From assembly GCF_006345805.1 (NCBI RefSeq), contig NC_043003.1, forward strand, positions 113,150,001-113,214,000: a DNA stretch of 64,000 bases. The letters run 5' to 3'. The notes under the pieces were generated by a model. The model saw nothing but the letters and a program-made list of their open reading frames with translations, was not told the DNA's origin and ran no database searches. The stretch comes from Octopus sinensis (taxonomy: Eukaryota). Position 1 is the stretch's first letter. Every line of letters begins with the position of its first letter. A program made the position numbers and the translations under genes. Below are positions 7,749 to 62,135 of this stretch, piece by piece.

Positions 7749-8147
7749 TACTCTTTTACTTGTTTCAGTCATTTGACTGCGGCCATGCTGAAGCACCGCC
7801 TTTAATCGAGCAACTCGACCCCGGGACTTATTCTTTTGTAAGCCCAGTACTTATTCTATCGGTCTCTTTTGCCGAACCGCTAAGTAACGGGGACATAAAC
7901 ACACCAGCATCGGTTGTCAAGCAATGCTAGGGGGACAAGCACAGACACACAAACACAGACACGCATATATATATACATATATACGACGGGCTTCTTTCAG
8001 TTTCCGTCTACCAAATCCACTCACAAGGCTTTGGTCGGCCCGAGGTTATAGTAGAAGACACTTGCCCAAGGTGCCACGCAGTGGGACTGAACCCGGAACC
8101 ATGTGGTTGGTAAACAAGCTACTTACCACACAGCCACTCCTACGCCT
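7749..8147 (-). mobile_element. tRNA-derived CORE-like SINE, family C
   Basis: Head AGGCGTAGGAGTGGCTGTGTGGTAAG...GGTTCAGTCCC, body GGGCAAGTGTCTTCTACTATA, internal (TA)/(TG) run, tail GACTGAAACAAGTAAAAGAGT. Matches 48881-49288 and 50121-50564. Confidence 0.9.
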
Positions 8148-8766
8148 ATAAGATGTAAATATAAGATGTAAATAAATACGTAAAAGAGTTGATGAAGAAA
8201 TGGAGATATCTATGGAGCTGAATATAATAAAACACAGATTGGGAAACAAACCAAATCAACATGGCGTACTGTTTTACAGAGCGGAGGAAGATTTTAAAGT
8301 TGACACAGACTTTATTAGAGAATAATAGAAGTTTTGCATCAGGATTTTATAAAACACGAAGCGCAACCATTTAATGGTGTTTGTGGTTTAGCGGATGACA
8401 TTTAAAACAATGGAGACAAGGAAGTAAGTCACAAGAAGAAAGAAAAGGAAGAAGTGAGAGGGAAACAAATAAAGAAGAGATGATGATGAACAACAAGAAG
8501 ACGAGGAGGAGGTCAGGAAAGGAAGAAGAGAAATAAAAGAAGGTGATGGTGATGAGGAGGATGATGACGAAGCAGAAGGAGGAAGAGGAGGTGGCGAAGG
8601 AAAAAGAAGTATAGCGAGAGACGGGGGTATATTAGTGATAACTGTTATGTCATTTAAACTAACCAAGATGATTTGGTGTATTAGAGCTATTTCTGTCAGG
8701 GCAGCAGAAACAGTAGCAACAGCAGCAGCAGCAGCTGTGATGGCGATGGTGGTGGTGGTGGTGGTG

Positions 8767-8815
<49 letters not shown>

Positions 8816-9269
8816 AGTTCCGAGTAAGGAAACCTGAAGGGATACTCAATGAAGTGAAATTATGTGAGTGTTTGTCATTTACTTCTAAGTTATTTTGGCG
8901 ACTCTGGATGTCTGTAAAGCTAAGAGTCAGAGGTTCGATTTGTTTAGAGATTTACGTGGGAATTAGTTACTTTCGTGTCATAATTTGCATTGGTTGAAAG
9001 TTATTTGGAATCTCCAAAGAATTCCAATGCTGTGTTGAGCACTCACTCTCCCTGTTCGATATTAACGTTTATATGATAATTTCGAACTAACACTAAAAGG
9101 TTGTCCTTATAGTACTCGGATTTTCGAATGCGGCAGTGAAAAGCTACGATACATTCTCGTCAGCTATTAGTGGCAACAGACGCTACGAGAAACCGTTAAA
9201 TATAAGGGACGTAATTCTAATAGGTGGAAAAAAGAAAAAAGAATTCTTTTGTTGTTACATTTTATTGTA

Positions 9270-9668
9270 TACTAGCAGTATCACCCGGCGTTGCTCAGGT
9301 TTGTAAGGGAAATAACTATATTAGCATTTTTAGAGATGTAAAGTATAATAGCCATCTCAATATGGCTAACCACAAAGGGGGGGTGTTACTGTAGCTTTTT
9401 ACGTTCTAAGATTTAATAATAAATTTTTAGAGAGTTACTTCCCTTGTATATGCCAAAAATGCATTAAAAATGGAAAAAATTCATGGTTAATTTTTTTTTT
9501 AATCGTAGACTCATCGTAGACGCGCGCTAATACCCAGAAGGGCTCGATATGAATCACGACTATAAGATACCCGGTTTTGGTTAAACTGCACCGCAAAATG
9601 TGGGAGTAGTTAGGAATCTAAATCGTAGGAGACAGACAGCACAAAACCTCACTTTTATATATAAAGAT
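9270..9668 (+). mobile_element. Non-autonomous Helitron/Helentron-like element
   Basis: Starts TACTAGCAGTATCACCCGGCGTTGC and ends GACAGACAGC...CTTTTATATATAAAGAT. This terminal architecture resembles Lep1/DINE-type elements (recognition from memory, no ORF). Confidence 0.55.
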
Positions 9669-10234
9669 ATATATATAGGTTATGAGAGGTAATGGTGTTA
9701 GTGAGACCCAAAGATGTTAGGTAATGCTAAATAAGTACTATGGATAAACCATAGTTGAGTTCCAGGTTCGGTGATTATGCGAATAAGGGGTCCAACGAAG
9801 GTCATATATCAGCGTGTGTATCTAATTTTTTTTTCCGTAATGCGATAAAAAACCAAGGCTGTGTAGAATTTAGAACATAAAAATATAAGATCTTACAGCT
9901 GTTTCTAAGATATTTATTATATCCCTTCATCGGAGACGGTGTGAGAAGATGGTTAAGCAATAGTTTAGTGAAGAAAATACAAAGTAGAGAGTGAGGTGAG
10001 GGAATGAAAATTGATGTGATATATGCAGGGTTGGGGTTCAATGTATACCATTCTGCTTAAATAATGGATCTACAAATAAAACATCCCTGCATATCTCACA
10101 TCTATTTTCATTCCTCCACCTCACTCTCTACTTCGTAACGATTTTACCTTACTAATGCATTCCCTACTTTTAGGTCGCTTTAAATAAAACCCTTGATTCA
10201 ATAACACTACGTATAAATTCTATAGGATATGAAA

Positions 10235-10641
10235 CCACTCTCCTGGATAATAAGAACAATGGAAATGCACGGAGTAGCAGAAAACATGAGAAGCCTTATA
10301 TGGAATAGCATGAAATGGTGGAGGACGGAATTGACATCAGGGAGTCAAGGATTAGGAGGAGTGAAAATCAAGAGAAATCTTCTAGGGGAACAGTGTGTTC
10401 CCACTGATCTTTGTGCAGGGAATGATCCCCTTGAGAGAAATACTATAGAAAACAAAGTTGGGATAAGACCTGGGAAGAGGTAAAGGAAAACTGAACTACT
10501 TGCTATTCAAGGAGGTGTTTCTTGTTTGGAGTTTGGAGTGTTTCAAAGTAATTCGGTTGATATCATTTGGTGTATTAGAACTTTATCTGTCAGGGCAGCA
10601 GAATATATACACACACACACACACACATACACACATACACA

Positions 10642-10703
<62 letters not shown>

Positions 10704-10734
10704 ACGTATAATGCATATATACTTATGTATGTGT

Positions 10735-10804
<70 letters not shown>

Positions 10805-11275
10805 AAGAGATACGTACATAACATACATACATACACATACACACATATGATATACCTGCATACAAACACATGCATGTATAGGCTGGTGTATATATATTGT
10901 TCGCAAAAACTGAGGCAGAACTGGACAGTCTAGTCCAGTCTGTGCGGATTTTTTCCAGTGATATTAAGATGGAATTTGGACTCTAAATATGTACTACGAT
11001 GGTGATGAAACGAGGAAAGCTTGTCAGGATATTGAGGCATATGGTTACCAAGTGGTGAAATGATGAAGGCAAGAAGACGAGGAGGAGGAGGGCAGGAAAG
11101 AAGAAGCTATAAACACCTGCGGATACTTGAGCCAGATGGAATCAAACACCACGACATGAAGGAAAAGACAAGAAGAGAATACAGAAGAGGAAGTAAAGGA
11201 GATGGACAAGCACTCAAGAAAACTCCAAACGATGCATGGAGCCCATCATCCACGTGCAAGCACTAAACACCTAAT
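10235..11275 (+). pseudogene. Dong/R4-type LINE reverse transcriptase remnant, interrupted by a ~390-bp insertion
   Basis: SWIIRTMEMHGVAENMRSLIWNSMKWWRTELTSG..GGVKIKR, then KLNYLLF | LFAKTEAELDSLVQSVRIFSSDIKMEFGL*ICTTMVMKRGKLV, YKHLRILEPDGIKHHDMKEK, MHGAHHPRA. Motifs are collinear with the R4/Dong RT; stops and frameshifts present. Confidence 0.8.
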
Positions 11276-14689: not shown

Positions 14690-14957
14690 TTAGAGATTAG
14701 AGTATTCGGTTTAGAATCGTAAGGTCGTGAGTTCGATTCCTAGCGGTGCACTGCGTACTAAAGAAAGACACTTTATTTCACGTTGCACCCGTCCACTCAG
14801 TTGCGAAAAACGAGTGTATCTAAAGTTCAAAGGACCAACCGTGTCACATTATGTGCCATGCTGAAACTCCCAGAGAACTACGTTCAGGGATATACATGTC
14901 TGTGGAATACTCAGCCACTTGCACGTTAGTTTATTCAGCAGATGAACTGCAACCCTT
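14690..14957 (+). mobile_element. Diverged tRNA/CORE-like SINE with a family-A tail
   Basis: GAGTTCGATTCC B-box, AAGACACTTTATTTCACGTTG core, and ACATGTCTGTGGAATACTCAGCCACTTGCACGTTA, which matches the family A 3' part. Confidence 0.7.
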
Positions 14958-15074
14958 ATCGTTGTAACCGAAGGATGTCAGTTTAAGTATAATCTGTGAC
15001 CCTCAATTTTTACAACACTAATCTTCATAACGATTAAGTGTGCCTTGAAATATAGCAACGAATGTGTGTGTGTA

Positions 15075-25349: not shown

Positions 25350-26950
25350 GAGAAAGAAGAAGAAGAAGAAGAAGAAGAAGAAGAAGAAGAAGAAGAAGAA
25401 GAAGAAGAAGAAGAAGAAGAAGAAGAAGAAGAAAACGAAATAAGAAATTTGACTTAGAAAAATGTACCAAGGCAACCTTAAAAAGAGGAAAACTAGTTAA
25501 GAGTAGCAATATCACACTAGATAAAGTCAATGAAATAAGAGAATTAGACAAAAGCCAGACTTACAAATACTTAGGAATCCATGAAATAGATACAATACAA
25601 CACACACAGATGAAAGAGAAGATTAAAAAAGAATACCATAGAAGAGTTAGTTTAATATAGAAAACAGAGCTCAATGCGAAAAACAAGATAATAGGTATGA
25701 ACACTTGAGCAGTCACAATTATAATTTACAACTACAATATCCTTAATTGGACACTAAATGAACTAATCAAAATAGACAGGAACAAGAAGAAAAATAATGA
25801 CAGGATTTAGGATGCACCACCCAAAATTTGACATGGAAATGTTTTATATAGAAGATGGTAGAGACCTTATACAACTAGAAAAGTATTACAAAATAACCAC
25901 CTTAGGACTACAAAAACACCTACTTTAGAAGCAAGGAAAACTAATACAAACAGCCACAAAACAGAAAACCGTTTTCAGTCTTTAAGGAAGCTGACAAATA
26001 CAAACAAGAAGTCATACTACCTAACAACTATGAAGAAAAAACAGACAAAACAAAAGCTGTAAAGCAAATAAAATCCAAACTAAAACTGGAACAACAACGG
26101 ATCATAGTAAAACGATGGCAAGAAAAGCCCCTTCATGACAAATACTGGGCTAAACTAAATGCAAAAGAAATAGACAAATCCCAGCATTGGCTGAAAAGCT
26201 CAGGACTCAAAGCAGAGACTGAAGAATTTTTAATTGCAGCACAAGACCAAAGCCTCTCCACCAGAAATTACCAAAAACATATAATGAAAAGAAATATAAC
26301 AAGTAACTGCAGAATATGTGGAGATGGACAAGAAATAATAAATCAACTTGTCTCTGGCTGCCCAGTCCTGGCTAAGAAGGAATATATTCACAGGGACGAT
26401 AGAATTGGAACCTACATACAGTGGAAGCTATGCCAACACTATGGAATAACAACAGAAAAAAGATAGTATAGGCACACACCAGAAAAGGTCACAGAAAACG
26501 AGAAAGCAACCATACACTGGAATATGCCAATACACACAGATAGAGAAATTAAGGCCAATAGGCCAGATATAGTTGTCAGAGATCATGAGGAAAGAAGATG
26601 CTTTCTAACTGATGTATCAATAACAACAAATGATAACGTTATTCTAAAAGAAATGGAGAAACTTTCAAAACACAAAGACCTGGATATAGAGGTAACTCGA
26701 ATGTGGAGTCTAAAAAGCAGAAACAATTCCTATCATAGTGGCGCTTTGAGAATGATAAAAAAAAATAGTCAGACAAATACATAAAAAAACACCAGGACTA
26801 ATAAATATATATTATAACATTCAGAAAATTGCACTACTGGGCACTGCACATATCCTACATAAAACACATCCAATACAGTGAAAATGAGAGCATCACAGCA
26901 AACCACTGCTCATACCCAAAACACACACAGCTGCGCTCGGTAGTGAAGTA
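25100..26950 (+). pseudogene. Dong/R4-clade LINE remnant (RT C-terminus, CCHC finger, restriction-like endonuclease, 3' UTR)
   Basis: KCTKATLKRGKLV, YKYLGIHE, MKEKIKKEY, WLKSSGLKAETE..LIAAQDQSL.TRNY, CRICGDGQEIINQLVSGC, NRPDIVVRDHEERRCFLTDVS. Multiple stops; ends in an (AAT/AAC)n array. Confidence 0.9.
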
Positions 26951-27468
26951 AAAGAACAATAACAATAATCATAATAATAATAATAACAAGAACAACAACA
27001 ATAATAATAAGAATAATAACAAGAACAATAATAATAATAATAATAATAACAATAACAAGAACAACAACAACAACAATAATAATAACAATAATAACAATAA
27101 AAATAAAAATAATAATAATAATAATAACAATAATAACAAGAACAACAACAATAATAATAATAACAAGAACAACAATAATAATAATAATCAATTCTTTTTT
27201 ATTGGCCACAAGGGCTAACACGCATGATTACATAAAGGGACAAGACAGGACGAAAGGTTACAAAGGGTTTTGCCGTTTTTTAAAAACATCGAGTAAAAAT
27301 CTTTATAACACTTATAAAATTCAACAATGAAAAACTCCCAAAATGGGGAGACGTCTCGAAAGGTTCCCGGTGGAAAAAACCCTACAAAAGCCAACGGGAG
27401 CCTGGTCAAAAAAAGGGGGTGTAGAGAGTCCCCTTTCTTCTCCTTTTACATTACCTTTTTCTTTGAAA

Positions 27469-30400
27469 TCACAGGCGAAACCTGAGAACTGGTCCATTTA
27501 TACAGGCCAGTCTCGCACAATTCACCCACCTTTCATAAAACTTGCTATCGGACAGCACTTTCCTCTCTAACCTCATCTTCCTTTTCAAGTGAAACTTGAA
27601 AAAGTTGATGAGGCCTTGACCAAAGAGGAAAGTGTCTGACTTTAGCCCTTTCAAACGAGTCCACCACACGACTTCTTTCGCCACAGCCACAAGGCACAAG
27701 AAAACGGCCTCGCCCTCCTTGTTAAAGGAGGTCGGCGGGGCAATCTTCACTATGGATTCGGCCGATAGTCGGATCCGTCCTACACGTGACAGTAGCTGTT
27801 CGACATAAACCCATATTTCAGCAATACTCGGGCACTGGACGAGTGCGTGCAGAACGGTTTCGTCGTCCTGGCAACACCTCGGGCAGGCCCGGCTGACGGC
27901 ACTTCCGTGCCGGTAGAGTTTATCTCGAACAGGCAGAGCCCCTCGGTAGCACTGCCAGGCGAGAGACCTCTGGAAATTATCCATCGGCCCCGGCCCGAAA
28001 GTCCTCCCGAACAGACCGCTCAGTTCGTCGTCTTCAACGCCTAGAGTTTCCCCGAGAACGTCGTCGCATTTTTCCTCCACTAACCCTCTATAGAAAGCTA
28101 GAGTGGAGCTGTAACCGACCGCATTGCCCGCCTGGCGGAGGGCGGAGAGGGCTTGACGGCACTCGAGGTGCCAAGCGCCCTTTCTCGGTCTACGTTTGAT
28201 CCAGGTCTGCAGCTCCGTCAAAGAGACGAGCTGCGGAAAATCGCGTCTGACAAAAGACGACCACACCTGTTCACCGTCTAGGAAGCGCTTGAGATGCCGC
28301 AGCCTGAGCGCATGTCTGCGCAACAGCAACCACGGCATTCCAAGGCCTCCGTTCAGCGGTCGTTGACAGCAGATGGATCGCCTGACCAGTGGCACCTGAC
28401 CCTTCCACAAAAAGTCGAAGAGCAGGCGTACCAGCTTGGCCAACCAGCGGTCGGGACAAGGGACGACGGTCAAGCGGTAATAGATGACGGATGCGATGTA
28501 CGCATTCGCCACCTCCGCTCGACCTTTCAGGGACAGCTTCCTCTCGGCCCATTTCTGGGTGAGACGTGCCACCCTGCTCGTCACCTCTTCCCAGTTCTTA
28601 TCCACCTGGAGGTCCGGACCGAACCAGACCCCGAGCAGTTTAACGGGTCCGTCTGTCCAGCGCCCTACGACGCTGTTGGACGGCATGGGCTTGCCTCTCC
28701 AGGTGCCCAGTTGCAAGCCCACAGACTTTTCCGCGTTAATCTTTGCCCCTGTCACCGCTTCGTACTGGTTTAGCGTCTCGCCAATCAGGCCAATGTGCCT
28801 GTGGCTCGACACCACCACGGTGACGTCGTCGGCATAAGCAGACACGCTGTTTCCGCCTCCTAGATCGCGCGGGATGCCCCTCAAAGCCTCCAACTTGCGC
28901 AGTAATGGCTCGAGAGTCAAAATGTACAAGAGGGAGGAGAGAGGGCATCCTTGGCGGACCGAACGCGAGATGTCGAACGGTTCCGAAAGGTGACCGTTCA
29001 CCCGTATCACCGAGCAGATGTTGCTGTATAAAGCAGCGATCCACCCGCGGAAGACTGGACCGAAGCCGGCTGCCTTGAGGACAGCTGCCAGGTACCGATG
29101 GTCGACCCTATCGAAGGCTTTACTCTGATCCAAGTTGATCAAAGCCCCACCCGCGCCAGCGTCGTTACCCACCCTCTCTATGATGTAGCGCATGAGATGG
29201 AGGTTGTCGTGTATCGACCTGGTCGGCACGGCGCATGTCTGCGTCCCGCCGACCAGCTTGTCCACGACAAGCGCCAATCTCTTGGCTAGCACCTTGGCCA
29301 AAATCTTCAACTCTGCATTGAGCAGAGTGATGGGCCGGAAATTCCCTATAACGTCCCCCTTGTTTGGGTCCTTCTTTAGCAAAGCCACCACCCCTCGACA
29401 GACAAAAGCAGGAATTCTCCCGTTTTGCTGCCAGTTGCAGTAGACGTTTGCCAACAGGTCCGCAAACAAGTCTGGCATTGAAAAGTAAAGCTCGTAGGGC
29501 AGACCATCCAAACCCGGCGATCTACCTCTCGTGCAACTCTTCATCGCTTCCTGTACTTCCCAGGCAGATATCGGTCCTTCGCAGCACTCTGCCTCGCTGT
29601 CCGAGAGTTGCGGCAGTCCGTCCAGGTACACACCGAAGTCTGTACCGTTGGTGTCCGTTCCACCGCTCGTCCCAAACAGTTGAGCAAAGTGCCGCTGAAG
29701 CACCGTACACATCTGCTTCGGTTGGGTAACCTCGCGCCCGTTCTGGTCCACCAAAGACCGAATGGTTGCTCTGTTGCCTCGCTTCGCCTCCGCCACGCGG
29801 GCCCATCGAGCGGCTCTAGTCCCCTCCCCGCTTAGCGAACGTGCCTTAGCTCTGACAACGCAGCCTTCGTGTTTGGCGTCGAAGTGTTGGTCGAGGGCCA
29901 ACCTTGCCGCCAACACGTCGGTCGCGATGCCAGTGTCAAGAGCCTCGTCTAGTTTCTTAACTAAATCCCGCTCTCTCTTCCTACGTTCAATAGCTAGAGT
30001 CTTACTATACCTAATCGACTCTACTCTAATTGCTCTCTTGAGGGCAAACCACCAGTTGTTGTTGATGATTGCCCCCGTGAGCGCCCGCTTAACTAGTAAA
30101 CTAATCCGGTCTCTGTAAGCTTTGCACGCCGTTAACGACGCGTTCAGCTTCCAGTAGCCGGGTCCCTGTCTATGTAGCCTATCTAAGTCGACCGTACAGA
30201 TCACTAATTTGTGGTCCGTATATTCGACTAGGTGGAATTGTGGACACCCTACGCTGTCCTTATCCGCTGGCCTACAAAACACTCTATCTAAGTACGATCT
30301 AGACGACCCGATGCGGTTTGTCCAAGTCCACATTGGCACATTCGGGTTGTCTAGTCGAAACCTGTCGGACAGCTGAAAGCGGCCGAGTAGGTTGGCGAGG

Positions 30401-30903
30401 CTCTTGCACCCTCCCCCTCTCCTATCAGACGCTCCCCTGCCCACCCGATCGAAACGTTCGTCTAAGACAGCGTTCCAATCCCCAACTAGTACTAGAGTGC
30501 GTGACGTTCCCAGGAAAACTTCCAGACGTTTGAAATAATCCGACTGCCCTGCTCCTGTCGGAGCGTAGGCAGCCAGCAGTCTGAAAGCACCGCCGTCACT
30601 ACCGTCCACGTCGAGGACCACCAACTTACCTTCCGGATCCAAGAAGACTGTCCTTATTTTCAGGTCCAGGCCCTTCCGAAACAACACCGCAGTACCACCA
30701 CCGCCCGCTCCCGGCCGACACGGAGATAGAAATATCTCGTATCCGCCGAAAAGGGCTGCGAGTTCCTGCGGGTCGGAGAGCCTGGTTTCACTGATGGCTG
30801 CTACATCCACATCATGAAACCTCAGGTCGTTTAACAGGTGACCCTGTTTCCAAGGTGACCCGAGGCCTCTCACATTCAAGCAACCGATTCTAAGATTTGC
30901 CAT
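27469..30903 (-). CDS. LINE ORF2: APE endonuclease + reverse transcriptase + C-terminal zinc finger (1144 aa, uninterrupted)
   Basis: APE: CLNVRGL, ISETRL, YAP, GDWNA, YLDRVF, TDHKLV. RT: SPGLDGL, FRPITLLN, DQSKAFDRVDH, RQGCPLS, YADDV, KLLGVWF. Zinc finger: CPRC..DETVLHALVQC. WKLN/LSLKGR motifs fit L1/Tx1. Confidence 0.97.
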   Translation of the reverse strand: MANLRIGCLNVRGLGSPWKQGHLLNDLRFHDVDVAAISETRLSDPQELAALFGGYEIFLSPCRPGAGGGGTAVLFRKGLDLKIRTVFLDPEGKLVVLDVDGSDGGAFRLLAAYAPTGAGQSDYFKRLEVFLGTSRTLVLVGDWNAVLDERFDRVGRGASDRRGGGCKSLANLLGRFQLSDRFRLDNPNVPMWTWTNRIGSSRSYLDRVFCRPADKDSVGCPQFHLVEYTDHKLVICTVDLDRLHRQGPGYWKLNASLTACKAYRDRISLLVKRALTGAIINNNWWFALKRAIRVESIRYSKTLAIERRKRERDLVKKLDEALDTGIATDVLAARLALDQHFDAKHEGCVVRAKARSLSGEGTRAARWARVAEAKRGNRATIRSLVDQNGREVTQPKQMCTVLQRHFAQLFGTSGGTDTNGTDFGVYLDGLPQLSDSEAECCEGPISAWEVQEAMKSCTRGRSPGLDGLPYELYFSMPDLFADLLANVYCNWQQNGRIPAFVCRGVVALLKKDPNKGDVIGNFRPITLLNAELKILAKVLAKRLALVVDKLVGGTQTCAVPTRSIHDNLHLMRYIIERVGNDAGAGGALINLDQSKAFDRVDHRYLAAVLKAAGFGPVFRGWIAALYSNICSVIRVNGHLSEPFDISRSVRQGCPLSSLLYILTLEPLLRKLEALRGIPRDLGGGNSVSAYADDVTVVVSSHRHIGLIGETLNQYEAVTGAKINAEKSVGLQLGTWRGKPMPSNSVVGRWTDGPVKLLGVWFGPDLQVDKNWEEVTSRVARLTQKWAERKLSLKGRAEVANAYIASVIYYRLTVVPCPDRWLAKLVRLLFDFLWKGQVPLVRRSICCQRPLNGGLGMPWLLLRRHALRLRHLKRFLDGEQVWSSFVRRDFPQLVSLTELQTWIKRRPRKGAWHLECRQALSALRQAGNAVGYSSTLAFYRGLVEEKCDDVLGETLGVEDDELSGLFGRTFGPGPMDNFQRSLAWQCYRGALPVRDKLYRHGSAVSRACPRCCQDDETVLHALVQCPSIAEIWVYVEQLLSRVGRIRLSAESIVKIAPPTSFNKEGEAVFLCLVAVAKEVVWWTRLKGLKSDTFLFGQGLINFFKFHLKRKMRLERKVLSDSKFYERWVNCARLACINGPVLRFRL

Positions 30904-31090
30904 GTTTCAAAAGTTAGGAAAAAAAAAGGAGAAAAAAGGCTCTACTTACTGTTGTTGGTGGTGGGGGTGGCTCCCTTGTGCTTTTGCACGGGTGCTTAAT
31001 AATATTTTGTAAAGTTTCTGAGAGAAACTTTCCCTAACGATCCCACATCGTTAGGGAATATTTGTTTTATTTCGTTGTAAACTGTTTTGT

Positions 31091-31760
31091 TTATTTTAAT
31101 TGTGAGAATGTGTGCTGGTGGTGTGTGTGTGTAGGTATTATGAAATCTGTAATGTTTGTGCTTGTTTTGTTTTTCAAATACTCAACCAGTTCCTGGTTTC
31201 TTGTATTCACTGCTGTAATCGTGTCTGTAATTGTGTCTGTGTTTGTTTGTGTCTGTGGTAGTGGCAGTAGTGGTGTCGAAAGTGTTGTTGTTGTTGTTTG
31301 TTGTTGTGCGTGTGTGTTGTTGTTGATGTTGTTGTTGATGTTGGGAAGTACTGTTTGTTCGTGCTTCCCCTGTAAATCTTTTTGTTTTTTCCTCCTTTTC
31401 TTTTTTGGAGGTACTATGTTCCATTCTCCTTTGTTGGAATCGGAGCTCGCACAATCCGAGATCTCTTCATCCGGCAAAGGAATGGTTGAGGGGTCTGCTT
31501 CAGTAGCAGGACGAAAAGTTTCTGGTTCCACCGGTATCGGTGGTGCCGCTGCTCCTGTTACTGTTGATGTCGCTGCTGTCGACCTTCGAGGTACTGGTGT
31601 CGGTGTTGGTTTGGTGGTGGTTGTCGGTGTTGGTTTGGTGGTGGTTGTTGTTGTTGGAGGTGGTGTTGCTCGTCTTGGTGCTGGTGTTGGTGATGGTGTT
31701 GGTGGTGTGGCATCCTTTGGTGTTTCTTGCTGTTTTTGTTGTTTCTGTTGTTGTTGCTTG

Positions 31761-31809
<49 letters not shown>

Positions 31810-32641
31810 GCTGCTGCTGCCTCTTGCTATATTCCTCCATTCTCTTTTTTTGAATGGGGCAGTCCCTTTTTAGGTGGCTTTCGCTACTGCAGAGGAAACA
31901 TTTTGGCTTTCGCCCCTCTACAATAACATTTAGCCTTGTCCCATCCAGCAAGATGACAAAGTCAGGTATGGCATTGATGTTTTCCTGCTGGATCTGTACC
32001 AGCAGTTGAATGCCCATGCCTGACCAGTTCTTTTCTCGTACCCTCCGAACATTCAGAATAGTGGCATTGTCCTCTATGCCATAGAGGACAGCCGCCACTA
32101 GCCATGAGATTTTCTGTTCGGGGGGTATTGTGCTTATAGTTATTTTTGTACCTACGCCCGAGGTACGTCGGGACGAGGAACAAATGTTCATTTTGCAAGG
32201 GCGAAATGGCGTTCGCCCTTGCAAGCTCCTCTGTTGGGAAGCGAACCTCCACGGTTCCAAATCGCTTCCCTCTTGTCACATAGCTCTTCTGGCCCCAAAT
32301 GGGCTTCAGAGCCATCTCTAACTGTTGTGGTGTGGCGTTAAACAATCTTTTAGTTTTCTTTTCGAAGACTTTATAAAAGATTGTTCTTTTGTTTGTCTCT
32401 TGTGTGAGTTGTTGAGGTGTGTTGAGGAAAACACTGTTCCCCTCCTTTCTCAACAAATCTTGTGCCATCTTTATGTCCTCCATCGTTATTTCTACATCTT
32501 CCGAAATTTGCTTCGCAGCAGAAGCAAAATCGTTAGAGTTTTTAACATTTTTTTGTTGGTTCTTGTCTGTATTTTTGTCTGCTATAAGTTTCTTTTCCTC
32601 CCTCTTCGGTACAGCATCACTTGTTGAAGGCAGAGGAGGGA
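31091..32641 (-). pseudogene. Tx1 ORF1 (gag-like nucleic-acid-binding protein), frameshifted
   Basis: Frame A (...FGTVEVRFPTEELA...FLVPTYLGRR) switches at ~32150 to frame B (TKITISTIPPE...VEGRKPKCFLCSSESHLKRDCP = C-X2-C-X4-H-X4-C), then poly-Q and Pro/Thr-rich tail. Confidence 0.85.
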
Positions 32642-32776
32642 AATCAAGATAAGAACAACAATAATAATAATAATAATAACAATAAGAACAACAACAATGA
32701 TAATAATAACAATAATAATAATAATAATAATAACAACAATAATAATAGTAATAGTAATAATAATAACAACAACAAT

Positions 32777-33173
32777 TTTTTTTTTTTTGGAAGGAAGCAC
32801 TCTGTCGGTTACGACGACGAGGGTTCCGGTTGATCCGAATCAACGGAACTGCCTGCTCGTGAAATTAACGTGTAAGTGGCTGAGCACTCCACCGACACGT
32901 GTACCCTTAACGTAGTTCTCGGGGATATTCAGCGTGACACAGAGAGTGACAAGGCCGGCCCTTTGAAATACAGGTACAACAGAAACAGGAAGTAAGAGTG
33001 AGAGAAAGTTGTGGTGAAAGAGTACAGCAGGGATCACCACCATCCCCTGCCGGAGCCTCGTGGAGCTTAGGTGTTTTCGCTCAATAAACACTCACAACGC
33101 CCGGTCTGGGAATCGAAACCGCGATCCTATGACCGCGAGTCCGCTGCCCTAACCCCTGGGCCATTGCGCCTCC
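32777..33173 (-). mobile_element. tRNA-derived SINE, family A, with poly(A) tail
   Basis: Near-identical to 4799-5188; flanked by AACAACAACAAT (32765-32776, 33174-33185). Confidence 0.92.
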
Positions 33174-36691: not shown

Positions 36692-36912
36692 AAGGCGGCG
36701 AGCAGTCAGAATTGCCAACGCTTCTGGCATGATTAGCGGTTTTTCTTCCGGTTCTTTACGTTCTGAACTTAAATTCGGTAGGGGGTCAACCTTATCTTTC
36801 ATCCTTTTGGGGGACGATACAATAAAAGGACCAGTCAAGCGATTGAATCAATTTATTCAACTTGCCCCCCTCTCCTCGAAAATACCGGCCTTGTGCCAAG
36901 ATTAGAAAGATT
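36692..36912 (+). mobile_element. SINE family B (diverged, tail type 2)
   Basis: GGCGGCGAG head, CTTTCATCCTTTTGGGG central domain, tail GGCCTTGTGCCAAG. Confidence 0.75.
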
Positions 36913-37399
36913 TAATTTTAACAATATCTGGTTATAGATATAAATAGCATGATGTAGATATTACCAAATGTGTCAACTAACCGAATTCATTAGGATATTG
37001 TTCTGAAGCTGCAATGTCACCATTAAAAGCTCACATCCCAATGCAAACTTAACTTTTCTCAAACTTCTCGCTCACTTGCCAAAAGCAGTCAAATAAACAC
37101 CTCTTCGGGTCAAATACCTCGCAACAACATAAAAAATGGTGACGTTGTTGATGAGGACGTAAAACAAAGCTGTTCCACTAACTTCTAACTTAATGAAATA
37201 ATTCGGTGCTGATGACGCTTGTTGAAAAGAAACACGTGCCCAAGACTGTCCTCTTACCTCTACACAAGAAGCAGCCTGACTTTTTCCATAATCGCATGGA
37301 AACATTGAAAAATCTTTGATTGTTGAAATTGTCTCCTTTTACCTATGGCTCATATGGAGCTACATTCAACCGCCATTTGCTAACTGTGACACATCAAGA

Positions 37400-37630
37400 G
37401 GCGGTGAGCTGGCAGAAACGTTAGCACACCGGGCGAAATGCCTAGCAGTATTTCGTCTGCCGCTACGTTCTGAGTTCAAATTCCGCCGAGGTCGATTTTT
37501 GCCTTTCATCCTTTTGGGGTCTATTAAATAAGTACCAGTTACGCACTGGGGTCAATGTAATCGACTTAATCCGTTTGTCTGTAATTGTTTGTCCCCTCTA
37601 TGTTTAGCCCCTTGTGGGCAATAAAGAAGT
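37400..37630 (+). mobile_element. SINE family B (tail type 1, Tx1-like)
   Basis: GGCGGTGAGCTGGCAGAA head, GAGTTCAAATTCC B-box, GCCTTTCATCCTTTTGGGGTC..AAATAAGTACCAG domain, tail TTAGCCCCTTGTGGGCAATAAAGAA. Possible TSD ACATCAAGA (37391-37399, 37640-37648). Confidence 0.88.
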
Positions 37631-38044
37631 TAGAGGCGGACATCAAGAATATATGTTTTATCATATTTGATATACCTGTATGCGTGCATGTTCTCCATAT
37701 TCATGGCACTGGCTACTCTCAGATATTTGTCTTAACTCATTTTTTATTAGATTTGTGTAAATATGTTCATACATACATATCATGTACTTATACATATCAT
37801 GTATATACGCAAGTGCATACATGCAACCGGATGCTTACATACATTGCATAGACGTCGATTACTGCAAATACGATATCATGAACACATGTAAAGAAAGCGG
37901 GAAAGACGGTGGGGAAAGATATAATGTGAGTGCAAGATGGTTGCCAATTTCACTATACACTTTATATCACTTCACAAACTTATTTTACGTTCCAACGTGT
38001 AATTTCATAACTCTTATCAACCTACATTCACGTTTATGTCTCAT

Positions 38045-40186: not shown

Positions 40187-40488
40187 TGTGGAGGCACATG
40201 GCCTAGTGGTTAGAGCAGCGGACTCGTGTTCGAGGGATCGCGGGTTCGAATCTCAGACCGGATGATGTGTGTGTTTATGAGCGAAACACCTAAGCTCCAC
40301 GCAGCTCCGGCAGAATGTAATGGCGAGACTTCTGCTGTACTCTTTCGCTACAACTTTCTCTCACTCTTTCCTCCTGAATCTTGCAGCTCACCTCCGATGG
40401 ACCGGCGTCCCGTCCAGATGGGGAACCTATACGCCAAGAAACCGGGAAACCGGCCCTAATGAGCCAGGCATGACTCGAGAAGGAACAA
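40187..40488 (+). mobile_element. SINE with family-A head/body and a different 3' tail
   Basis: tRNA-like head, CTGCTGTACTCTTT..CAACTTTCTCTCACTCTT body, tail GAAACCGGGAAACCGGCCC...GAGAAGGAACAA; 11-bp TSD GCATGCTCGTG (40176-40186, 40489-40499). Confidence 0.88.
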
Positions 40489-44390: not shown

Positions 44391-45246
44391 ATTGAACGGT
44401 TTGTAATGTGTGTGTATGCATGTATGCATGTATGTGTGTATGTATGTATGTATGTATGTATGTGTGTGTGTATGCGTGTATGTATGTATGTGTGTGTGTG
44501 TGTATGTCTATCCGTCACTATCGAAAGAACAAATCCCTGTCAGTGAAATTTAAATCAGAGTAGAATCAAGTTGTGTGACGAATTGTAGGCAGGTCAAGAA
44601 TACTTTCCTTGCTACGTTTACTGACCGACTTTGCACAATGACTATTCTCTTTATTTACCTGAGACATTTCCTAATACAAGTAAATGCACTCAGCAATGAT
44701 TATACACACAAATGTAAGTTCTGAACCTGTACAAAAAAAAAATGGCAGATTTTGAAATTGTTTCCCTTTCAAGTTGTTCTTTATTGTCTCTTGTCAATTT
44801 AGTGTCAACATTCACTGACCAGTTGACATCAAAAACATTAAATACTTTTCTACTGAATTTGCTTCGGGAATGTTAACCAGAGTCTGCCATCCACTTATCG
44901 AACATTGGCAAGTACTAACTCACGGAACTCTAGGCTATTGAGTCAATCGGTGACTTCTGACGATTATTAATAAAGAAAATAAAAAGGTATTGATGCATAG
45001 ATTCATGTTTTGAGTTTTATTTTCATGTTGGAATCACGAAACCCCCCATCACCACACACACACACATGTCTAGTAGAAGTGGAAGTAGATAGATAAACAG
45101 ACAGACAGACAGACAGGTAGATAGGTAGATAGACAGACAGACAGATAGACAAACAGATAAATAGATAGATAGACAGAGAGAGAGACAGACAGATAGCTAG
45201 ATAGATAGATAGATAGATAGACAAACAGATAGACAGATAGATAGAC

Positions 45247-45692
<446 letters not shown>

Positions 45693-46419
45693 TAAACAGA
45701 CATAAATAAATAGATAGATTGATAGATAGACGGTGTCTAAATGGGCGAACGGACAAGAAAAGGCAAGGAAAATATCTTCTCTATTGAATATCGATCTGAA
45801 TATTTTGTGTTCGCATTCAATTATTCGTTCTTTCATGTGTGTGTTTGTGTGTGTAGTCTTGTTTGCGTATAAAGGGGTATAATGAGCATGTGTATGTGGG
45901 GAGGGCATGAGTGGAAGGAAGCATTTTTTTTATACATTTGTATGTTTGTATGTACGTATGTTAGTAGGTGTGTGTGTGTGTGTGTGTGTGTGCATTTTAT
46001 GTGCAATGCACTGATTCGGAAATTGCCCGATCACGCCCGTTCTCTAAAATATTCAATACCCCCCGGGGTTTCCGTCTATAAATAAGTAATAAGAGCTTAA
46101 TTTAGAGATAGTTCAGTTATACGCTCGCAGTAAGTGCTTTAGCGTTTATATTTTTGGGCGATCAGCTATTATAGAGGCGTAGGCGAGTGTGTGTGTGTGC
46201 GTAAATGTGAGTCTGTGAATCGGCGTGTGTATAATTTTAATATAGGGATGTAAAATGATTCCATTGGCTGACAATAAGTAGCACCTTCACTATACATCGC
46301 AAATATAACAATATCACATCTACACACGTACACGCGCGCACACACACATACGGCTCACTCCGTATTACTAAAGACCTATAAAGCATACACGTATGAGTCT
46401 GTATGTATTGACGTATATA

Positions 46420-50564: not shown

Positions 50565-51960
50565 AGAATCTGGCAGATAAATGAAAGGAATAAAAACACT
50601 TCGATTCCTTTAGCACTGAATATATTAAGTTTGTTACATGAAAAATTTCAACAAAAATCCTTCTTGCGAATCAATTTTGTATAAAGTCCAGCTGCCTAAA
50701 CAGGAATAATCATCGCCTATCTTTTTTTTTTATGAATAATAAGAAATTACATGGTCTGCGTCTAGGTCTGTTATCTGAGTGCTCCTCTATTATTTGATAG
50801 CGATGATGACGGTTTTTCCGCCTAAATATAGAGTTCTGCATGAAACCAGTAAAATCTGAAAGTGTGTAGTGGCATGATAAATGCTCTCCTGCAATTGACG
50901 ATGGTTCCTCGCAATTTGAAGAGCTATTTGTCAACTCCACAAAGTTTCTGCTGCTGAAGGTAATGTAATATCCACTGTTGATAAACCTCTTGAAGTCAGA
51001 TGAACTTGGAGGCTGGAAAGAAATTAAATTTGTTGCCTCGATAGATATATCTCCGTATAAAAGGCATTATATATAAGACTTATTCTTCGACTGGTTTTCT
51101 GGTATCGTCCTTAATTGTCATCACTGCTATATTAATAATTATATGTGATTAATCTAATAGTTTAACAAACTTATGTATTCCAGTTATTTTAAAGTTCCGA
51201 AAGGGTACATTTTCCGAATCAACGAATGGCCACTGCACTCCTTATTCATTTCCAAATTGTAAGTGTACTACGTGGTTAGTGCTTATCTCTATTCTTTAAA
51301 TCAAAGGATGCTAAAAATATCAAATTTTCTCCGAATTTACCTTCTACAATCTTGGAAAGAAATGGACGTCTCAAATAATATAATCGTAGCTATGCAAAGC
51401 CCTGGCAAAAAGAAGGGATATATATTGCTGAAACGCCAAACATTATACGACTTACTGAGCGATAAAGAACCGAAATATATCATTACTTGATCAAAACAAA
51501 ACATAAAATGCGTTTAAATTAATTGTGTTGGATTTAGTTGACACAATTTATGAGATCTTATCTCTCTAGAATCAGCGACTATGCTTAGTCATTGATTATC
51601 GCACTCTTAAAGAACTACATTAAAATGTACCTCGTAACAGAAGTAAGGATAGTATTCGTTTTATCATAAAGAACTCAGCTAATATTGATCCTACGTACAA
51701 TATTATATACACATATTACGTTTCGCCGGGTTTAATATTACTGGATACGTAATATTACTGGATACCTACAAGGTCTCTGAGTAAACTCGAAGCGAAATAC
51801 GAATTGTGCTCTCTTTATTCACGAGCTCACTGGTCCTCGTTGACCCCTAATAATGGTAAAAGATCAATGTGATATACATATATGTGTGCGTGTGTGTAGA
51901 AAGAGAGAGAGAGAGAGAGAGACTGACAGACAGACAGACAGACAGACAAATAGATAGATA

Positions 51961-52301
51961 TGTTTCTTTATTAGCCACACAGGGCTGCATACAGACGGGA
52001 CAGATTACAAAGTAGAGCTTTTCTTTTTGGGGGAAAGAAGAAAAAAAAAAGTTGGGTAGGTTTTCGATCAAAAGGGATCGTAAAAGGGAAAGGAGAAGAA
52101 GAAAAAAAAAAGAAACAAGAGAAAAAAAACGATCAATAGGGATCGTGTATCACAGTGTCATGATGTAAGGTGTAAAGGGGGAAGCAGATAAGGTTTCTCC
52201 GTGGGAAGAAAAGCCTACGGAAAAGACCGCAGTAACCTCGGTCAATATTGTTACATGTTACCACATTTGTTTGCAAGTAGGTAACCCTCTGTTTTAAATT
52301 T
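51961..52301 (-). mobile_element. 5'-truncated 3' end of a Tx1-like element inserted in (GATA)n
   Basis: Same 3' terminus as 45324. The longer 5' part contains CTTTTCCGTAGGCTTTTCTTCCCACGGAGAAACCTT, similar to CTTTTGTAGGGTTTTTTCCACCGGGAACCTT in the 3' UTR of the large Tx1. Confidence 0.72.
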
Positions 52302-52417
<116 letters not shown>

Positions 52418-60670: not shown

Positions 60671-61068
60671 AAGGCGGCGAGCTGGCAGAAACGTTAAGCA
60701 CGCCGGGCGAAATGCTTAGTGATATTTCGTCTGCTGTTACGTTCAGAGTTCAAATTCCGCCGAGGTCGACTTTGCTTTTCATCCTTTCGGGGTCGATAAA
60801 TTAAGTACCAGTTACGCGCTGGGGTCGATGTAATCGACTTAATCCGTTTGACTGTAATTGTTTGTCCTCTCTGCGTTTAACCCCTTGTGGGTAGTAAAGA
60901 AATAGGTATTTCGCTTGACTTTACGTTCTGGGTTCAAATTCTGCCGAGATCGAATTTGCCTTTCAGGGTCGATAAATTGAGTACCAGTTGCGTACTGGTT
61001 TTGATCTAATCGACTGGCCCCCTCCCCAAACACATTTCGGGCCTTGCACCTAGAGTAGAAAAGATTAT
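60671..61068 (+). mobile_element. SINE family B dimer (tail-1 monomer + 5'-truncated tail-2 monomer)
   Basis: Two tandem central domains; the whole unit is flanked by TTTTATCTCCT (60660-60670, 61069-61079). Confidence 0.85.
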
Positions 61069-61922: not shown

Positions 61923-62135
61923 GGCGGCGAGCTGGCAGAATCATTAGCTCGCTGGACAAGATGCTTACAGGCATTTCGTCCGTCTTTATGCTCTGTGTTC
62001 AAATACCACCGAGGTTGACTTTGACTTTTATCCTTTCGGGGTCGACAAAATGAGTATAATCTGATTGAGCACTGGATCGATGTAATCTCCCGCCCCCGAA
62101 ATTGCTGGCCTTGTGCCAACATTTGTAATCAATAT
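61923..62135 (+). mobile_element. SINE family B (tail type 2)
   Basis: GGCGGCGAGCTGGCAGAATC head, ATCCTTTCGGGGTCGACAAAATGAGTA domain, tail TGGCCTTGTGCCAAC. Confidence 0.8.

What the first reader, a model, noticed from the sequence alone, without database searches (positions are those of the whole stretch)
27192..27225. Shared 3'-terminal CTTGT-loop hairpin with compensatory changes links a Tx1 LINE to a SINE family
Seen: the Tx1 3' end TGTTAGCC-CTTGT-GGCCAATAAAAAAGAA is almost the same as the SINE B tail TGTTTAGCCC-CTTGT-GGGCAATAAAGAA (37601-37628). The 60887-60903 copy reads ACCC-CTTGT-GGGT (G-C to A-T covariation). GATA-embedded elements end AGCC-CTGTGT-GGCT-AATAAAGAAA. Tail-2 SINEs have an inverted stem, GGC-CTTGT-GCC (36887, 62107). 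Established: 3' tail sharing and stem-loop recognition are classical for L2, CR1 and RTE partners, whereas L1-group partners mostly recognise poly(A). Inference: a stringent, hairpin-recognising Tx1 machinery with its own SINE parasites, an uncommon and possibly undescribed pairing.
Basis: partly seen in the sequence, partly recalled or inferred. Interest (0 to 1): 0.8.

Follow-up and report, generated by a model that had tools for sequence, protein, structure and literature searches.

The report
Octopod LINE–SINE shared hairpin tail
The last ~45 bases of an L1/Tx1-like jumping gene in this octopus window form a small conserved hairpin module that related octopod LINEs and several short parasitic repeats (SINEs) also carry, which identifies the likely enzyme supplier for a large part of the octopod SINE load; this is a new example of a known kind of partnership, not a new mechanism.

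Summary
The LINE on the minus strand (ORF2 27469-30903, intact) ends at 27192 with GCC-CTTGT-GGC-c-AATAAAAAAGAA. SINE B (37400-37639, 60673-60905) and two (TCTA)n-embedded elements end the same way, and the similarity runs about 55 nt (0/2000 shuffles). I fetched relatives from Argonauta hians, Octopus sinensis and an unidentified metagenome sample. Their LINEs are 47-74% identical in ORF2 and carry the same terminal module. C.CTTGTGG..AAT is the only invariant block in five LINE 3' UTRs. A 20.8-kb Argonauta locus holds 25 copies of the module, in at least three SINE families.

The hairpin appears in every predicted fold and in the RNAalifold consensus, but it is only 3-4 bp long. Its folding energies are not unusual. 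Covariation is suggestive, not proven: one pair is seen as G-C, C-G and A-U, and P is about 0.02-0.08. Tail-2 SINEs match the 3' UTR of a different relative of the same LINE group.

Tx1 membership fits the architecture and the microsatellite-embedded insertions, but I had no reference sequences to test it. This particular LINE copy is not the closest tail match to SINE B. Stringent L1-clade LINE/SINE pairs and a Tx1-SINE pairing are already published. I rate it a new member of a known kind, of moderate interest.

The parts
27192..27240 (-). 3'-terminal tail module of the LINE. Inner hairpin: GCC 27215-27213, CTTGT loop 27212-27208, GGC 27207-27205. Then AATAAAAAAGAA to the element end at 27192.
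   Evidence: Read directly. Covariance-model hit of 47.2 bits, E 1.5e-7. The hairpin is in the MFE and centroid folds. It is the only invariant block among five LINE 3' UTRs.
27469..30903 (-). LINE ORF2, intact, 1144 aa: apurinic-type endonuclease, reverse transcriptase and a C-terminal zinc-binding domain.
   Evidence: Pfam Exo_endo_phos 3.7e-17, RVT_1 9.2e-30, zf-RVT 1.3e-8. The best solved structure is human LINE-1 ORF2p, 2.2e-51 over residues 4-861.
31091..32480 (-). LINE ORF1, with one frameshift near 32150-32260. It has a CX2CX4HX4C zinc knuckle (KCFLCSSESHLKRDC) and long Q/T/P-rich low-complexity stretches.
   Evidence: Two overlapping ORFs in different frames. Sequence read. No Pfam family passes threshold. 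The Argonauta LINE has homologous ORF1 pieces.
27192..32648 (-). The whole LINE copy. The 5' boundary is approximate.
   Evidence: It is bounded by (AAT)n arrays on both sides. Sequence.
26958..27188 (.). (AAT/AAC)n microsatellite abutting the LINE 3' end.
   Evidence: TRF: period 3, 77 copies.
32649..32766 (.). (AAT/AAC)n microsatellite abutting the LINE 5' end, the same complex repeat type as at the 3' end.
   Evidence: TRF: period 3, 39 copies. Read.
37400..37639 (+). SINE B copy 1, with the tail-1 module (hairpin GCCC 37607-10 / GGGC 37616-19). Flanked by the 9-bp duplication ACATCAAGA (37391-99, 37640-48).
   Evidence: Covariance-model hit of 53.7 bits.
60673..60905 (+). SINE B copy 2, with the tail-1 module (hairpin ACCC 60880-83 / GGGT 60889-92).
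   Evidence: Covariance-model hit of 57.4 bits.
60906..61068 (+). 5'-truncated tail-2 SINE (degenerate motif GGCCTTGCACC) joined directly to SINE B copy 2. The pair is flanked as one unit by the 11-bp duplication TTTTATCTCCT (60660-70, 61069-79).
   Evidence: The duplication was read directly.
36693..36914 (+). Tail-2 SINE, with the same head and body as SINE B and a different last ~55 nt. GGC-CTTGT-GCC at 36887-36897.
61923..62134 (+). Tail-2 SINE. GGC-CTTGT-GCC at 62107-62117.
45322..45545 (-). Short element with a tail-1-like end (AGCC-CTGTGT-GGCT-AATAAAGAAACATA) embedded in (TCTA)n. It is 5'-truncated relative to the 51959-52300 copy.
   Evidence: Flanking TAGA arrays 45086-45323 and 45545-45730. 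Covariance-model hit of 58.7 bits.
51959..52300 (-). The longer copy of the (TCTA)n-embedded element, with the same tail.
   Evidence: Flanking arrays 51904-51948 and 52302-52417. Covariance-model hit of 55.3 bits.

Best explanation
Positions 27192-27240 (minus strand) are the 3'-terminal recognition module of an L1-superfamily, Tx1-like LINE group of octopods. As RNA the module reads 5'-(Y)CUCU-R-UGUU-(1-3 nt)-[3-4 bp G/C stem]-CUUGU-[stem]-(1 nt)-AAUA-R-AGAAAU-3'. It is a short G/C hairpin capped by an invariant CUUGU pentaloop, possibly extended by an A/U-rich outer helix (UCU.UGUU with AAUA.AGA), and it ends 10-25 nt before the element terminus.

The most likely mechanism is the 'stringent' one. 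ORF2p of these LINEs binds this module on its own transcript to start target-primed reverse transcription. tRNA-derived SINEs and short LINE-derived elements that acquired the same module are copied in trans. These include SINE B here, at least three SINE families in Argonauta, and the (TCTA)n-embedded elements.

Different lineages of the LINE group carry variant modules. Tail-2 (GGC-CUUGU-GCC) matches a more distant relative. Some lineages insert into microsatellites: (AAT)n for this copy and (TCTA)n for the short elements.

Shown: the sequence sharing, its conservation across LINE lineages and genera, its terminal position, the predicted hairpin, and the embedding in microsatellites. Inferred: protein binding, trans-mobilisation, and a functional role for the stem.
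For: (1) The tail is shared beyond chance and sits at the 3' end in every case.
(2) The same module ends LINEs whose ORF2 is 47-74% identical to this one. These are Argonauta hians L087:11141-11199 (a near-full-length LINE) and L087:4741-4858, O. sinensis L088:11021-11079, and, in degraded form, L091.
(3) In an alignment of the five LINE 3' UTRs the only invariant block is C.CTTGTGG..AAT; the rest is barely alignable.
(4) A covariance model finds 32 hits in 177 kb: 25 in 20.8 kb of Argonauta, 6 in the window and 1 in L088. The Argonauta hits belong to at least three SINE families, one of which is homologous to SINE B in body and tail.
(5) The hairpin is in the MFE structure of all ten tails folded and is the RNAalifold consensus.
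(6) The stem keeps pairing while its sequence changes. Pair 3 is G-C in most, C-G in SINE B and A-U in an Argonauta LINE fragment. Pair 4 is G-C, A-U or G-U. Overall 85.7% of cells pair, against 39-50% when partners are slid. In the inner stem, 47/52 cells pair in 13 lineages, and P=0.017 for tail-1 alone.
(7) No element with this tail ends in poly(A).
(8) All three tail-2 SINE tails align to one site in the 3' UTR of the L002-type relative (scores 24-31 against 17+-2.3). There the hairpin is AAGGC-CUUGU-GCCUU, and a further relative has CGGC-UUGAC-GCCG at the equivalent place.
(9) A SINE B copy and a tail-2 SINE were inserted as one chimera with a single 11-bp duplication, so both RNAs met the same reverse transcriptase.
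Against: The stem is only 3-4 bp. Folding energies are no better than shuffles (z from -1.8 to +1.2). The formal covariation test is weak: 1 of 11 pairs changes on both sides, 41/500 shuffles reach the observed pairing, and the RNAalifold covariation term is -0.17.

Two LINE tails, including this one, have a mismatch at pair 4. The L091 LINE has a broken stem and lacks AATAAAGAA. The arms next to the loop never vary, which fits recognition of the primary sequence equally well.

This LINE copy has a 19-nt insert and three extra A's in its module, and it matches SINE B less well than other LINEs do. SINE B copies are not in microsatellites. The sample is small (64 kb + 2 x 21 kb + fragments), and copies within a family are not independent. 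There is no experimental evidence.
Confidence: 0.62

Rival explanations
1. The module is recognised, or conserved, as primary sequence only. CCUUGUGG plus AAUAAAGAAAU would be a linear protein-binding site or an RNA-processing signal (AAUAAA polyadenylation signal with an upstream element), and the partial palindrome GCC...GGC would be incidental.
For: The loop and the two closing pairs are invariant in all tail-1 lineages. The stem is very short and thermodynamically unremarkable. Covariation statistics are borderline. AATAAA lies about 10 nt before the element end, as a poly(A) signal would.
Against: Where the arms do differ they differ together: GCC/GGC, GCCC/GGGC, ACCC/GGGU, GACC/GGUC and GGC/GCC. 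No poly(A) tail follows any copy. The abundant Argonauta SINEs have AAUAGA rather than AAUAAA. Pol III SINE transcripts have no obvious need for a Pol II poly(A) signal.
Confidence: 0.25
2. The tail belongs to another partner, for example a CR1, L2 or RTE LINE that really drives these SINEs. On this view the L1/Tx1-like LINEs picked it up secondarily by recombination or template switching.
For: Tail exchange between retroposons is known (PMC5786205). Octopus genomes hold active CR1 and RTE families (PMC13282606, PMC9115989). The chimeric B2 + tail-2 insertion shows that template switching happens here.
Against: All five protein-coding elements found with the tail are the same LINE group, with ORF2 47-74% identical, in two genera and one unidentified sample. 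That points to inheritance within this group. No other LINE type in the 177 kb searched carries the module.
Confidence: 0.08
3. The resemblance is a chance match of short low-complexity ends.
For: The hairpin core is only 11 nt and the flanks are A/T-rich.
Against: 0/2000 shuffles reach the observed score. The expected count of the 24-mer is 0.00. Covariance-model E-values go down to 1e-11, and the position is always terminal.
Confidence: 0.01

Closest known systems
Maize/sorghum LINE1-1_ZM with ZmSINE2/ZmSINE3, and Chlamydomonas L1-1_CR with SINEX-3_CR (stringent L1-clade pairs; Ohshima 2012, PMC3472496)
   Same: An L1-superfamily LINE shares about 45-80 nt of its 3' end with tRNA-SINEs. The shared part forms a hairpin with conserved loop nucleotides, a conserved 3' flank and some compensatory stem changes.
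   Different: Those are plants and green algae, and the elements end in poly(A). Here the host is a cephalopod, the ends are not poly(A) (some are microsatellites), the stem is much shorter, and the loop is CUUGU.
Tx1-Mar LINEs and SINEU in crocodilians (Kojima 2015, PMC4494074)
   Same: A Tx1-group LINE is proposed as the mobiliser of a SINE family, and the LINE group is target-specific.
   Different: That pairing rests on a shared insertion target (a Mariner transposon) and shared snRNA-derived 5' heads, not on a shared 3' hairpin tail. Here the link is the 3' tail, and SINE B does not share the LINE's microsatellite target.
Eel UnaL2/UnaSINE1 and zebrafish ZfL2 (L2 clade; PMC4176376 and references therein)
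   Same: This is the reference mechanism: ORF2p recognises a conserved 3' stem-loop, with loop bases critical, and SINEs with the same tail are mobilised in trans. These elements also have short 3' repeats at the very end.
   Different: A different LINE clade, a longer stem, a different loop, and experimentally proven.
Kibi/Koshi and crocodilian Tx1 families that insert into (TC)n, (TTC)n or (TTCC)n (Kojima & Fujiwara 2004, cited in PMC4494074)
   Same: L1/Tx1-group elements are found embedded in one kind of microsatellite on both sides.
   Different: The targets here are (AAT)n and (TCTA)n, seen in only four insertions. No SINE partners were reported for Kibi or Koshi in the papers I read.

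Membership tests
Stringent-type LINE/SINE pair with a common 3' tail | The SINE 3' end is homologous to the 3' end of a LINE in the same genome. | tested here: met
   Window LINE against SINE B: score 37 against 15.7+-2.5, 0/2000 shuffles. The Argonauta locus L087 holds both a LINE and many SINEs with the module.
Stringent-type LINE/SINE pair with a common 3' tail | The tail is conserved among diverged LINE lineages more strongly than the rest of the 3' UTR. | tested here: met
   The only invariant block in five LINE 3' UTRs is C.CTTGTGG..AAT. ORF2 identities range from 47 to 74%.
Stringent-type LINE/SINE pair with a common 3' tail | A stem-loop in the tail is supported by compensatory changes. 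| tested here: inconclusive
   The hairpin is predicted in all folds and by RNAalifold. One pair is seen as GC, CG and AU. Shuffle controls give 41/500 and 26/500. The lineage table gives P=0.017. L091 has a broken stem.
Stringent-type LINE/SINE pair with a common 3' tail | Retrotransposition or ORF2p binding depends on the tail. | not testable with these tools
   This needs a retrotransposition or RNA-binding assay.
Tx1 clade of the L1 superfamily | ORF2 has an apurinic-type endonuclease, a reverse transcriptase and a C-terminal Cys/His domain, and is L1-like rather than CR1-, RTE- or R2-like. | tested here: met
   Pfam domains. Human L1 ORF2p scores 2e-51 over residues 4-861, against R2 proteins at 1e-22 over the RT only. 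This places it in the L1 superfamily but does not separate Tx1 from L1.
Tx1 clade of the L1 superfamily | Type I ORF1 (RRM plus a CCHC knuckle), as described for Tx1-group elements of non-mammalian animals (PMC5203782). | tested here: inconclusive
   A CX2CX4HX4C knuckle can be read at about 31900-31860(-), but no RRM or zf-CCHC Pfam hit passes. ORF1 is frameshifted.
Tx1 clade of the L1 superfamily | The reverse transcriptase groups with Tx1 references in a phylogeny. | not testable with these tools
   No Tx1 or Repbase reference sequence was retrievable. Relatives at 30-35% identity occur in a turtle, a fish, amphioxus, a pseudoscorpion and a charophyte, and all are unnamed. Octopus genomes are annotated with active 'L1-Tx1' families (PMC13282606).
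Tx1 clade of the L1 superfamily | Target-specific insertion. | tested here: inconclusive
   The window LINE sits between two (AAT)n arrays, and both short elements sit between (TCTA)n arrays. An Argonauta LINE fragment lies in (ATT)n. However, the O. sinensis LINE copy and both SINE B copies are not in microsatellites, and n is small.
Relaxed, poly(A)-recognising L1 partnership (mammalian L1/Alu type) | Elements end in poly(A), and SINE and LINE share no other 3' sequence. | tested here: not met
   No tail-1 or tail-2 element ends in poly(A), and about 45-55 nt of specific tail are shared.

The most novel reading that the evidence does not exclude
One small CUUGU-pentaloop module is the common entry ticket for a whole octopod L1/Tx1-like LINE group. 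On this reading the group, not RTE or CR1, powered much of the octopod-specific SINE expansion (SINEs are about 12% of the O. vulgaris genome). Lineage-specific stem variants (tail-1, tail-2, 6-nt loop) would partition SINE families among LINE lineages, and the few nucleotides after the module would set the microsatellite target, (AAT)n or (TCTA)n. This would be the first animal L1-superfamily system to combine stringent hairpin recognition, multiple SINE parasites and microsatellite targeting.
Probability: 0.3. Interest if true: 0.65.

Novelty: new member of a known kind. Interest (0 to 1): 0.5.

Why it matters
SINEs are the largest and most lineage-specific repeat class in octopus genomes. 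Recent annotations still list almost all of them as 'unclassified', with no partner LINE named (PMC13282606, PMC8967140). A shared, conserved 3' module gives a concrete candidate: an L1/Tx1-like LINE group with at least one intact ORF2.

It also gives a simple sequence handle (..GCC-CTTGT-GGC.AATAAAGAAAT) for classifying SINE families, dating co-activity, and designing a retrotransposition assay. It adds an animal case to the argument that stringent 3'-end recognition is ancestral in the L1 superfamily and that poly(A) recognition is the derived state (PMC3472496). It does not reveal a new mechanism.

Tried and rejected
- Rfam: nothing relevant in the LINE 3' UTR or the SINE region.
- ARAGORN calls no tRNA in the window, so the tRNA origin of the SINE heads rests on reading B-box-like motifs.
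- The exact-protein look-up of the window ORF2 found nothing.
- The full-length ORF2 search gave mostly unnamed metagenomic relatives.
- A metagenome scan with an ORF2 alignment returned 80 loci, but only distant relatives at 24-33% identity. None carries the motif in a 3' UTR; there is a single match in L013, on the strand opposite its LINE.
- Attempts to name the clade from database names failed. The exhaustive representative search plus two cluster look-ups returned only 'hypothetical' or 'unnamed' proteins. The supplement of the Tx1-Mar paper is not held.
- The search for an octopod LINE with the tail-2 module returned only copies from the same unidentified ENA sample.
- The similarity of the part of tail-2 downstream of the hairpin (AGAYTAGAARG) to the L002 LINE end is not significant on its own (score 17 against 17.9+-2.5).
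- L001, L089 and L090 are cut before the 3' end.
- I considered that the A/A to G/G change opposite each other in the outer helix was covariation. I rejected this because Argonauta family X has A opposite G.
- I considered a poly(A)-signal reading; see the rival explanations.

Full report
**What is at the coordinates**

The window is AT-rich animal DNA (about 35% G+C) full of octopus-type tRNA-SINEs. Its LINE proteins have their closest named relatives in Argonauta hians and Octopus sinensis.

A nearly intact LINE lies on the minus strand.
- ORF2 (27469-30903) is open for 1144 aa. It has an Exo_endo_phos endonuclease, RVT_1 and zf-RVT. Its best solved-structure match is human LINE-1 ORF2p (2e-51 over residues 4-861). 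R2 proteins match only the RT core.
- ORF1 (about 32480-31091) has a CX2CX4HX4C knuckle and one frameshift.
- The element ends ...GCGTGTTAGCC-CTTGT-GGCCAATAAAAAAGAA at 27192, followed by TTG and an (ATT)n array.
- TRF finds (AAT)n arrays touching both ends of the element, at 26958-27188 and 32649-32766.

**Checking the observation**

The tail resemblance is not chance.
- The SINE B 24-mer and the (TCTA)n-element 24-mer each occur twice, against 0.00 expected.
- The LINE 3' UTR aligns to the last 60 nt of SINE B1 with score 37, against 15.7+-2.5 for shuffles (0/2000). It aligns to the (TCTA)n elements with 0-1/2000.
- MAFFT shows the shared part is about 55 nt: TGTAAYY.TTTGTCCYSTC, then TRYGTKYAGCC(C)-CTTGT-GG(G)CYAATAAAGAA. 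The LINE has a 19-nt insert in the middle.
- By nhmmer, SINE B (2 copies) and the tail-2 SINEs (3 copies) share head and body for about 170 nt and differ only in the last ~55 nt. This is a classical tail swap.

- The LINE stem is 3 bp plus an A.C mismatch.
- SINE B1 runs 11 nt past AAAGAA before its 9-bp target-site duplication.

**Bringing in relatives**

A search with the C-terminal 249 aa of ORF2 found annotated cephalopod proteins, and I fetched their loci.
- The Argonauta locus L087 holds a near-full-length LINE: ORF1 pieces at 6161-6703 and ORF2 at 7531-10969, 55-69% identical, with frameshifts. It ends ...GTCCCCTCTATGTTTTTGCC-CTTGT-GGCTAATAAAAGAAATA(ATT)4.
- The same locus has a 5'-truncated LINE 3' end finishing ...TTGGACC-CTTGT-GGTCAATAAAAGAATT(ATT)19.
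- The O. sinensis LINE (L088, about 50% identical) ends ...TTGTCCCCCTCTATGTTTGGGCC-CTTGT-GGCTAATAAAGAAATTGG.
- A fourth relative, from an unidentified sample (L091, 71%), has a degraded version: TCCT-CTTGT-GGCCAAT followed by a CA-rich end.

When the five LINE 3' UTRs are aligned, the only invariant block is C.CTTGTGG..AAT. Everything upstream is barely alignable. This is the pattern expected of a functional terminal element.

SINE B matches the O. sinensis and Argonauta LINE tails better (32/40 and 31/40) than it matches the window LINE (23/40). The partnership is therefore with the LINE group, not with this copy.

**How widespread the module is**

I built a covariance model from 14 tails and searched the 177 kb of cephalopod-related sequence held. 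It gives 32 hits at E<=1, the best at 1e-11.
- 25 hits are in the 20.8-kb Argonauta locus (21 of them at E<=0.0014).
- 6 are in the window: the LINE, 2 SINE B, 2 (TCTA)n elements and one weak hit.
- 1 is in L088, the LINE itself.

The Argonauta hits fall into at least three families. One is homologous to SINE B through body and tail. One is a short tRNA-derived SINE that also occurs as head-to-tail multimers. The third has a different pre-tail.

The module is thus shared by several independent non-autonomous families in two octopod genera. None of these elements ends in poly(A).

**Is it a hairpin?**

The evidence for a structure:
- The CUUGU-loop hairpin appears in the minimum-free-energy fold of all ten tails tested. 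Most folds extend it with an outer helix pairing UCU.UGUU with AAUA.AGA.
- RNAalifold on the 14-sequence alignment returns exactly the 4-bp hairpin as its only consensus structure.
- The arms change together in several lineages: GCC/GGC (most LINEs), GGCC/GGCU (O. sinensis LINE, Argonauta SINEs), GCCC/GGGC and ACCC/GGGU (SINE B), GACC/GGUC (Argonauta LINE fragment), AGCC/GGCU with a 6-nt loop ((TCTA)n elements), and GGC/GCC in tail-2.
- In a table of 13 lineages, 47 of 52 inner-stem cells pair. Shuffling the 3' arms gives P<5e-5 overall, but that figure is dominated by the single tail-1/tail-2 split. For tail-1 alone P=0.017.

- Folding z-scores are ordinary (-1.8 to +1.2).
- In the formal count, 85.7% of cells pair (39-50% when partners are slid). 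But 83.8% pair in column-preserving shuffles (41/500 reach the observed value).
- Only one of 11 pairs shows both-side changes (26/500).
- The RNAalifold covariation term is -0.17 kcal/mol.
- Decayed SINE copies mutate without compensation, as expected after insertion, so copies within a family add no information.

My judgement is that the structure is likely but not demonstrated. The invariant loop and closing pairs would also fit a linear binding site.

**Tail-2**

GGCCTTGTGCC also occurs once per unit in the 3' UTR of a more distant relative: ORF2 about 44% identical, ENA sample ERZ21867824, loci L002/L003.
- All three tail-2 SINE tails align to that one site (CCCCTCCCCAAA...GGCCTTGTGCC) with scores 24-31, against 17+-2.3.
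- There the hairpin is AAGGC-CUUGU-GCCUU and lies about 50 nt from the LINE end. The end is defined by the last copy of an array.
- A further relative (L084) has CGGC-UUGAC-GCCG at the equivalent place.

I could not find that lineage in an octopod, and the downstream similarity is not significant by itself.

**Target sites**

Embedded in a microsatellite:
- The window LINE, between (AAT)n arrays.
- Both short elements, between (TCTA)n arrays. One of them is 5'-truncated relative to the other, as target-primed reverse transcription produces.
- The Argonauta LINE fragment, within (ATT)n.

Not embedded:
- The O. sinensis LINE copy.
- SINE B1, with a 9-bp duplication.
- The SINE B2 + tail-2 chimera, with an 11-bp duplication (TTTTATCTCCT at 60660-70 and 61069-79).

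Microsatellite targeting is typical of Tx1-group, R1-group and Dong elements (PMC4494074). Here it rests on four insertions and may hold for only some lineages.

**Clade**

The element belongs to the L1 superfamily. 'Tx1' is plausible for four reasons.
- A CCHC-type ORF1 is described as consistent with Tx1 in non-mammalian animals (PMC5203782).
- Some insertions are embedded in microsatellites.
- Octopus genomes are annotated with 13 active L1-Tx1 families (PMC13282606).
- Relatives at 30-35% identity sit in turtle, fish and amphioxus, with far higher scores than human L1.

I could obtain no Tx1 reference sequence, so the defining test, an RT phylogeny, was not done.

**Comparison with what is known, and novelty**

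Shared 3' tails with a stem-loop are the textbook basis of stringent LINE/SINE partnerships. Within the L1 superfamily they are documented for maize/sorghum LINE1-1_ZM with ZmSINE2/3, including compensatory stem changes and a conserved loop, and for Chlamydomonas L1-1_CR with SINEX-3_CR (PMC3472496, PMC3747384). Tx1-Mar elements have been proposed to mobilise SINEU in crocodilians, on the basis of shared targets and 5' heads (PMC4494074).

The papers I could search do not name a partner LINE for octopus SINEs (PMC13282606, PMC8967140, PMC9115989, PMC4824008). Repbase reports are outside the library.

I therefore rate this a new member of a known kind. It is a useful and well-supported LINE/SINE tail partnership in octopods. 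The hairpin element is plausible but not yet proven, and the clade label is unverified.

**Verdict**
- Observation: confirmed.
- Interpretation: partly supported.
- Interest: 0.5.

Noticed in passing
window 60660-61079: A full SINE B copy (60673-60905) is joined head-to-tail to a 5'-truncated tail-2 SINE (60906-61068). The pair is flanked as one unit by an 11-bp duplication, TTTTATCTCCT (60660-70, 61069-79). It looks like one insertion in which reverse transcription began on a tail-2 SINE RNA and switched to the 3' end of a SINE B RNA.
   Followed up: partly
window 32787-33172 (-); also 4803-5185 (-), 40195-40407 (+), 14814-14975 (+), 59562-59713 (+): This is a different SINE family ('SINE A', about 385 nt). 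The copy at 32787-33172 ends in A13. It sits inside the same (ATT/GTT)n array immediately upstream of the LINE, so a poly(A)-tailed SINE and the hairpin-tailed LINE occupy one microsatellite.
   Followed up: no
window 37629-37648: Between the SINE B1 tail (..AATAAAGAA) and its 3' duplication ACATCAAGA lie 11 extra bases, GTTAGAGGCGG. The last five (GGCGG) repeat the first five bases of the SINE. The origin is unexplained: 3' transduction, template jump or chance.
   Followed up: no
window 45322-45545 and 51959-52300 (-): The two (TCTA)n-embedded elements differ in length only at the 5' end (225 against 342 nt). They could be 5'-truncated 3' ends of an unseen (TCTA)n-specific LINE rather than SINEs. 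No head or ORF was identified.
   Followed up: partly
L002 1-22307 and L003 1-14200 (ENA ERZ21867824): A relative of the LINE (ORF1 643 aa, ORF2 1158 aa) forms direct head-to-tail tandem arrays with a 6.43-kb period, and the sample holds hundreds of copies. Its 3' UTR has a second, 7-bp hairpin (CUGUGUA-CAC-UACACAG). One copy shows a compensated G-C to A-U change there (L003:14133), and another shows the one-sided intermediate (L002:20542). The organism is unknown.
   Followed up: partly
L087 (Argonauta hians, GCA_054771915.1) 1-20822: There are 25 tail-module hits in 20.8 kb, 18 of them on one strand. A short tRNA-derived SINE occurs as three head-to-tail units at about 4900-5345, directly after an (ATT)19 array that ends a LINE fragment.
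   Followed up: partly
L091 1730-1781: A LINE copy 71% identical in ORF2 has lost part of the 5' arm and has a CA-rich end (AATCAACACACACATC) in place of AATAAAGAA. It is either a decayed copy or a lineage with a different terminus.
   Followed up: no
window 26524-26784 (+): An 86-aa ORF resembles the C-terminal part of another retroelement protein (..RPDIVV..DV....D.N...KE.EK..K.KDL..E..RMW). It lies just beyond the LINE's 3' microsatellite.
   Followed up: no
window 31283-31810 (-): LINE ORF1 contains long CAA/CAG (poly-Q) and Thr/Pro-rich repeats that TRF reports as period-3, -12 and -24 arrays. This is unusual bulk for an ORF1, and its status (coding or expanded microsatellite) is unknown.
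   Followed up: no
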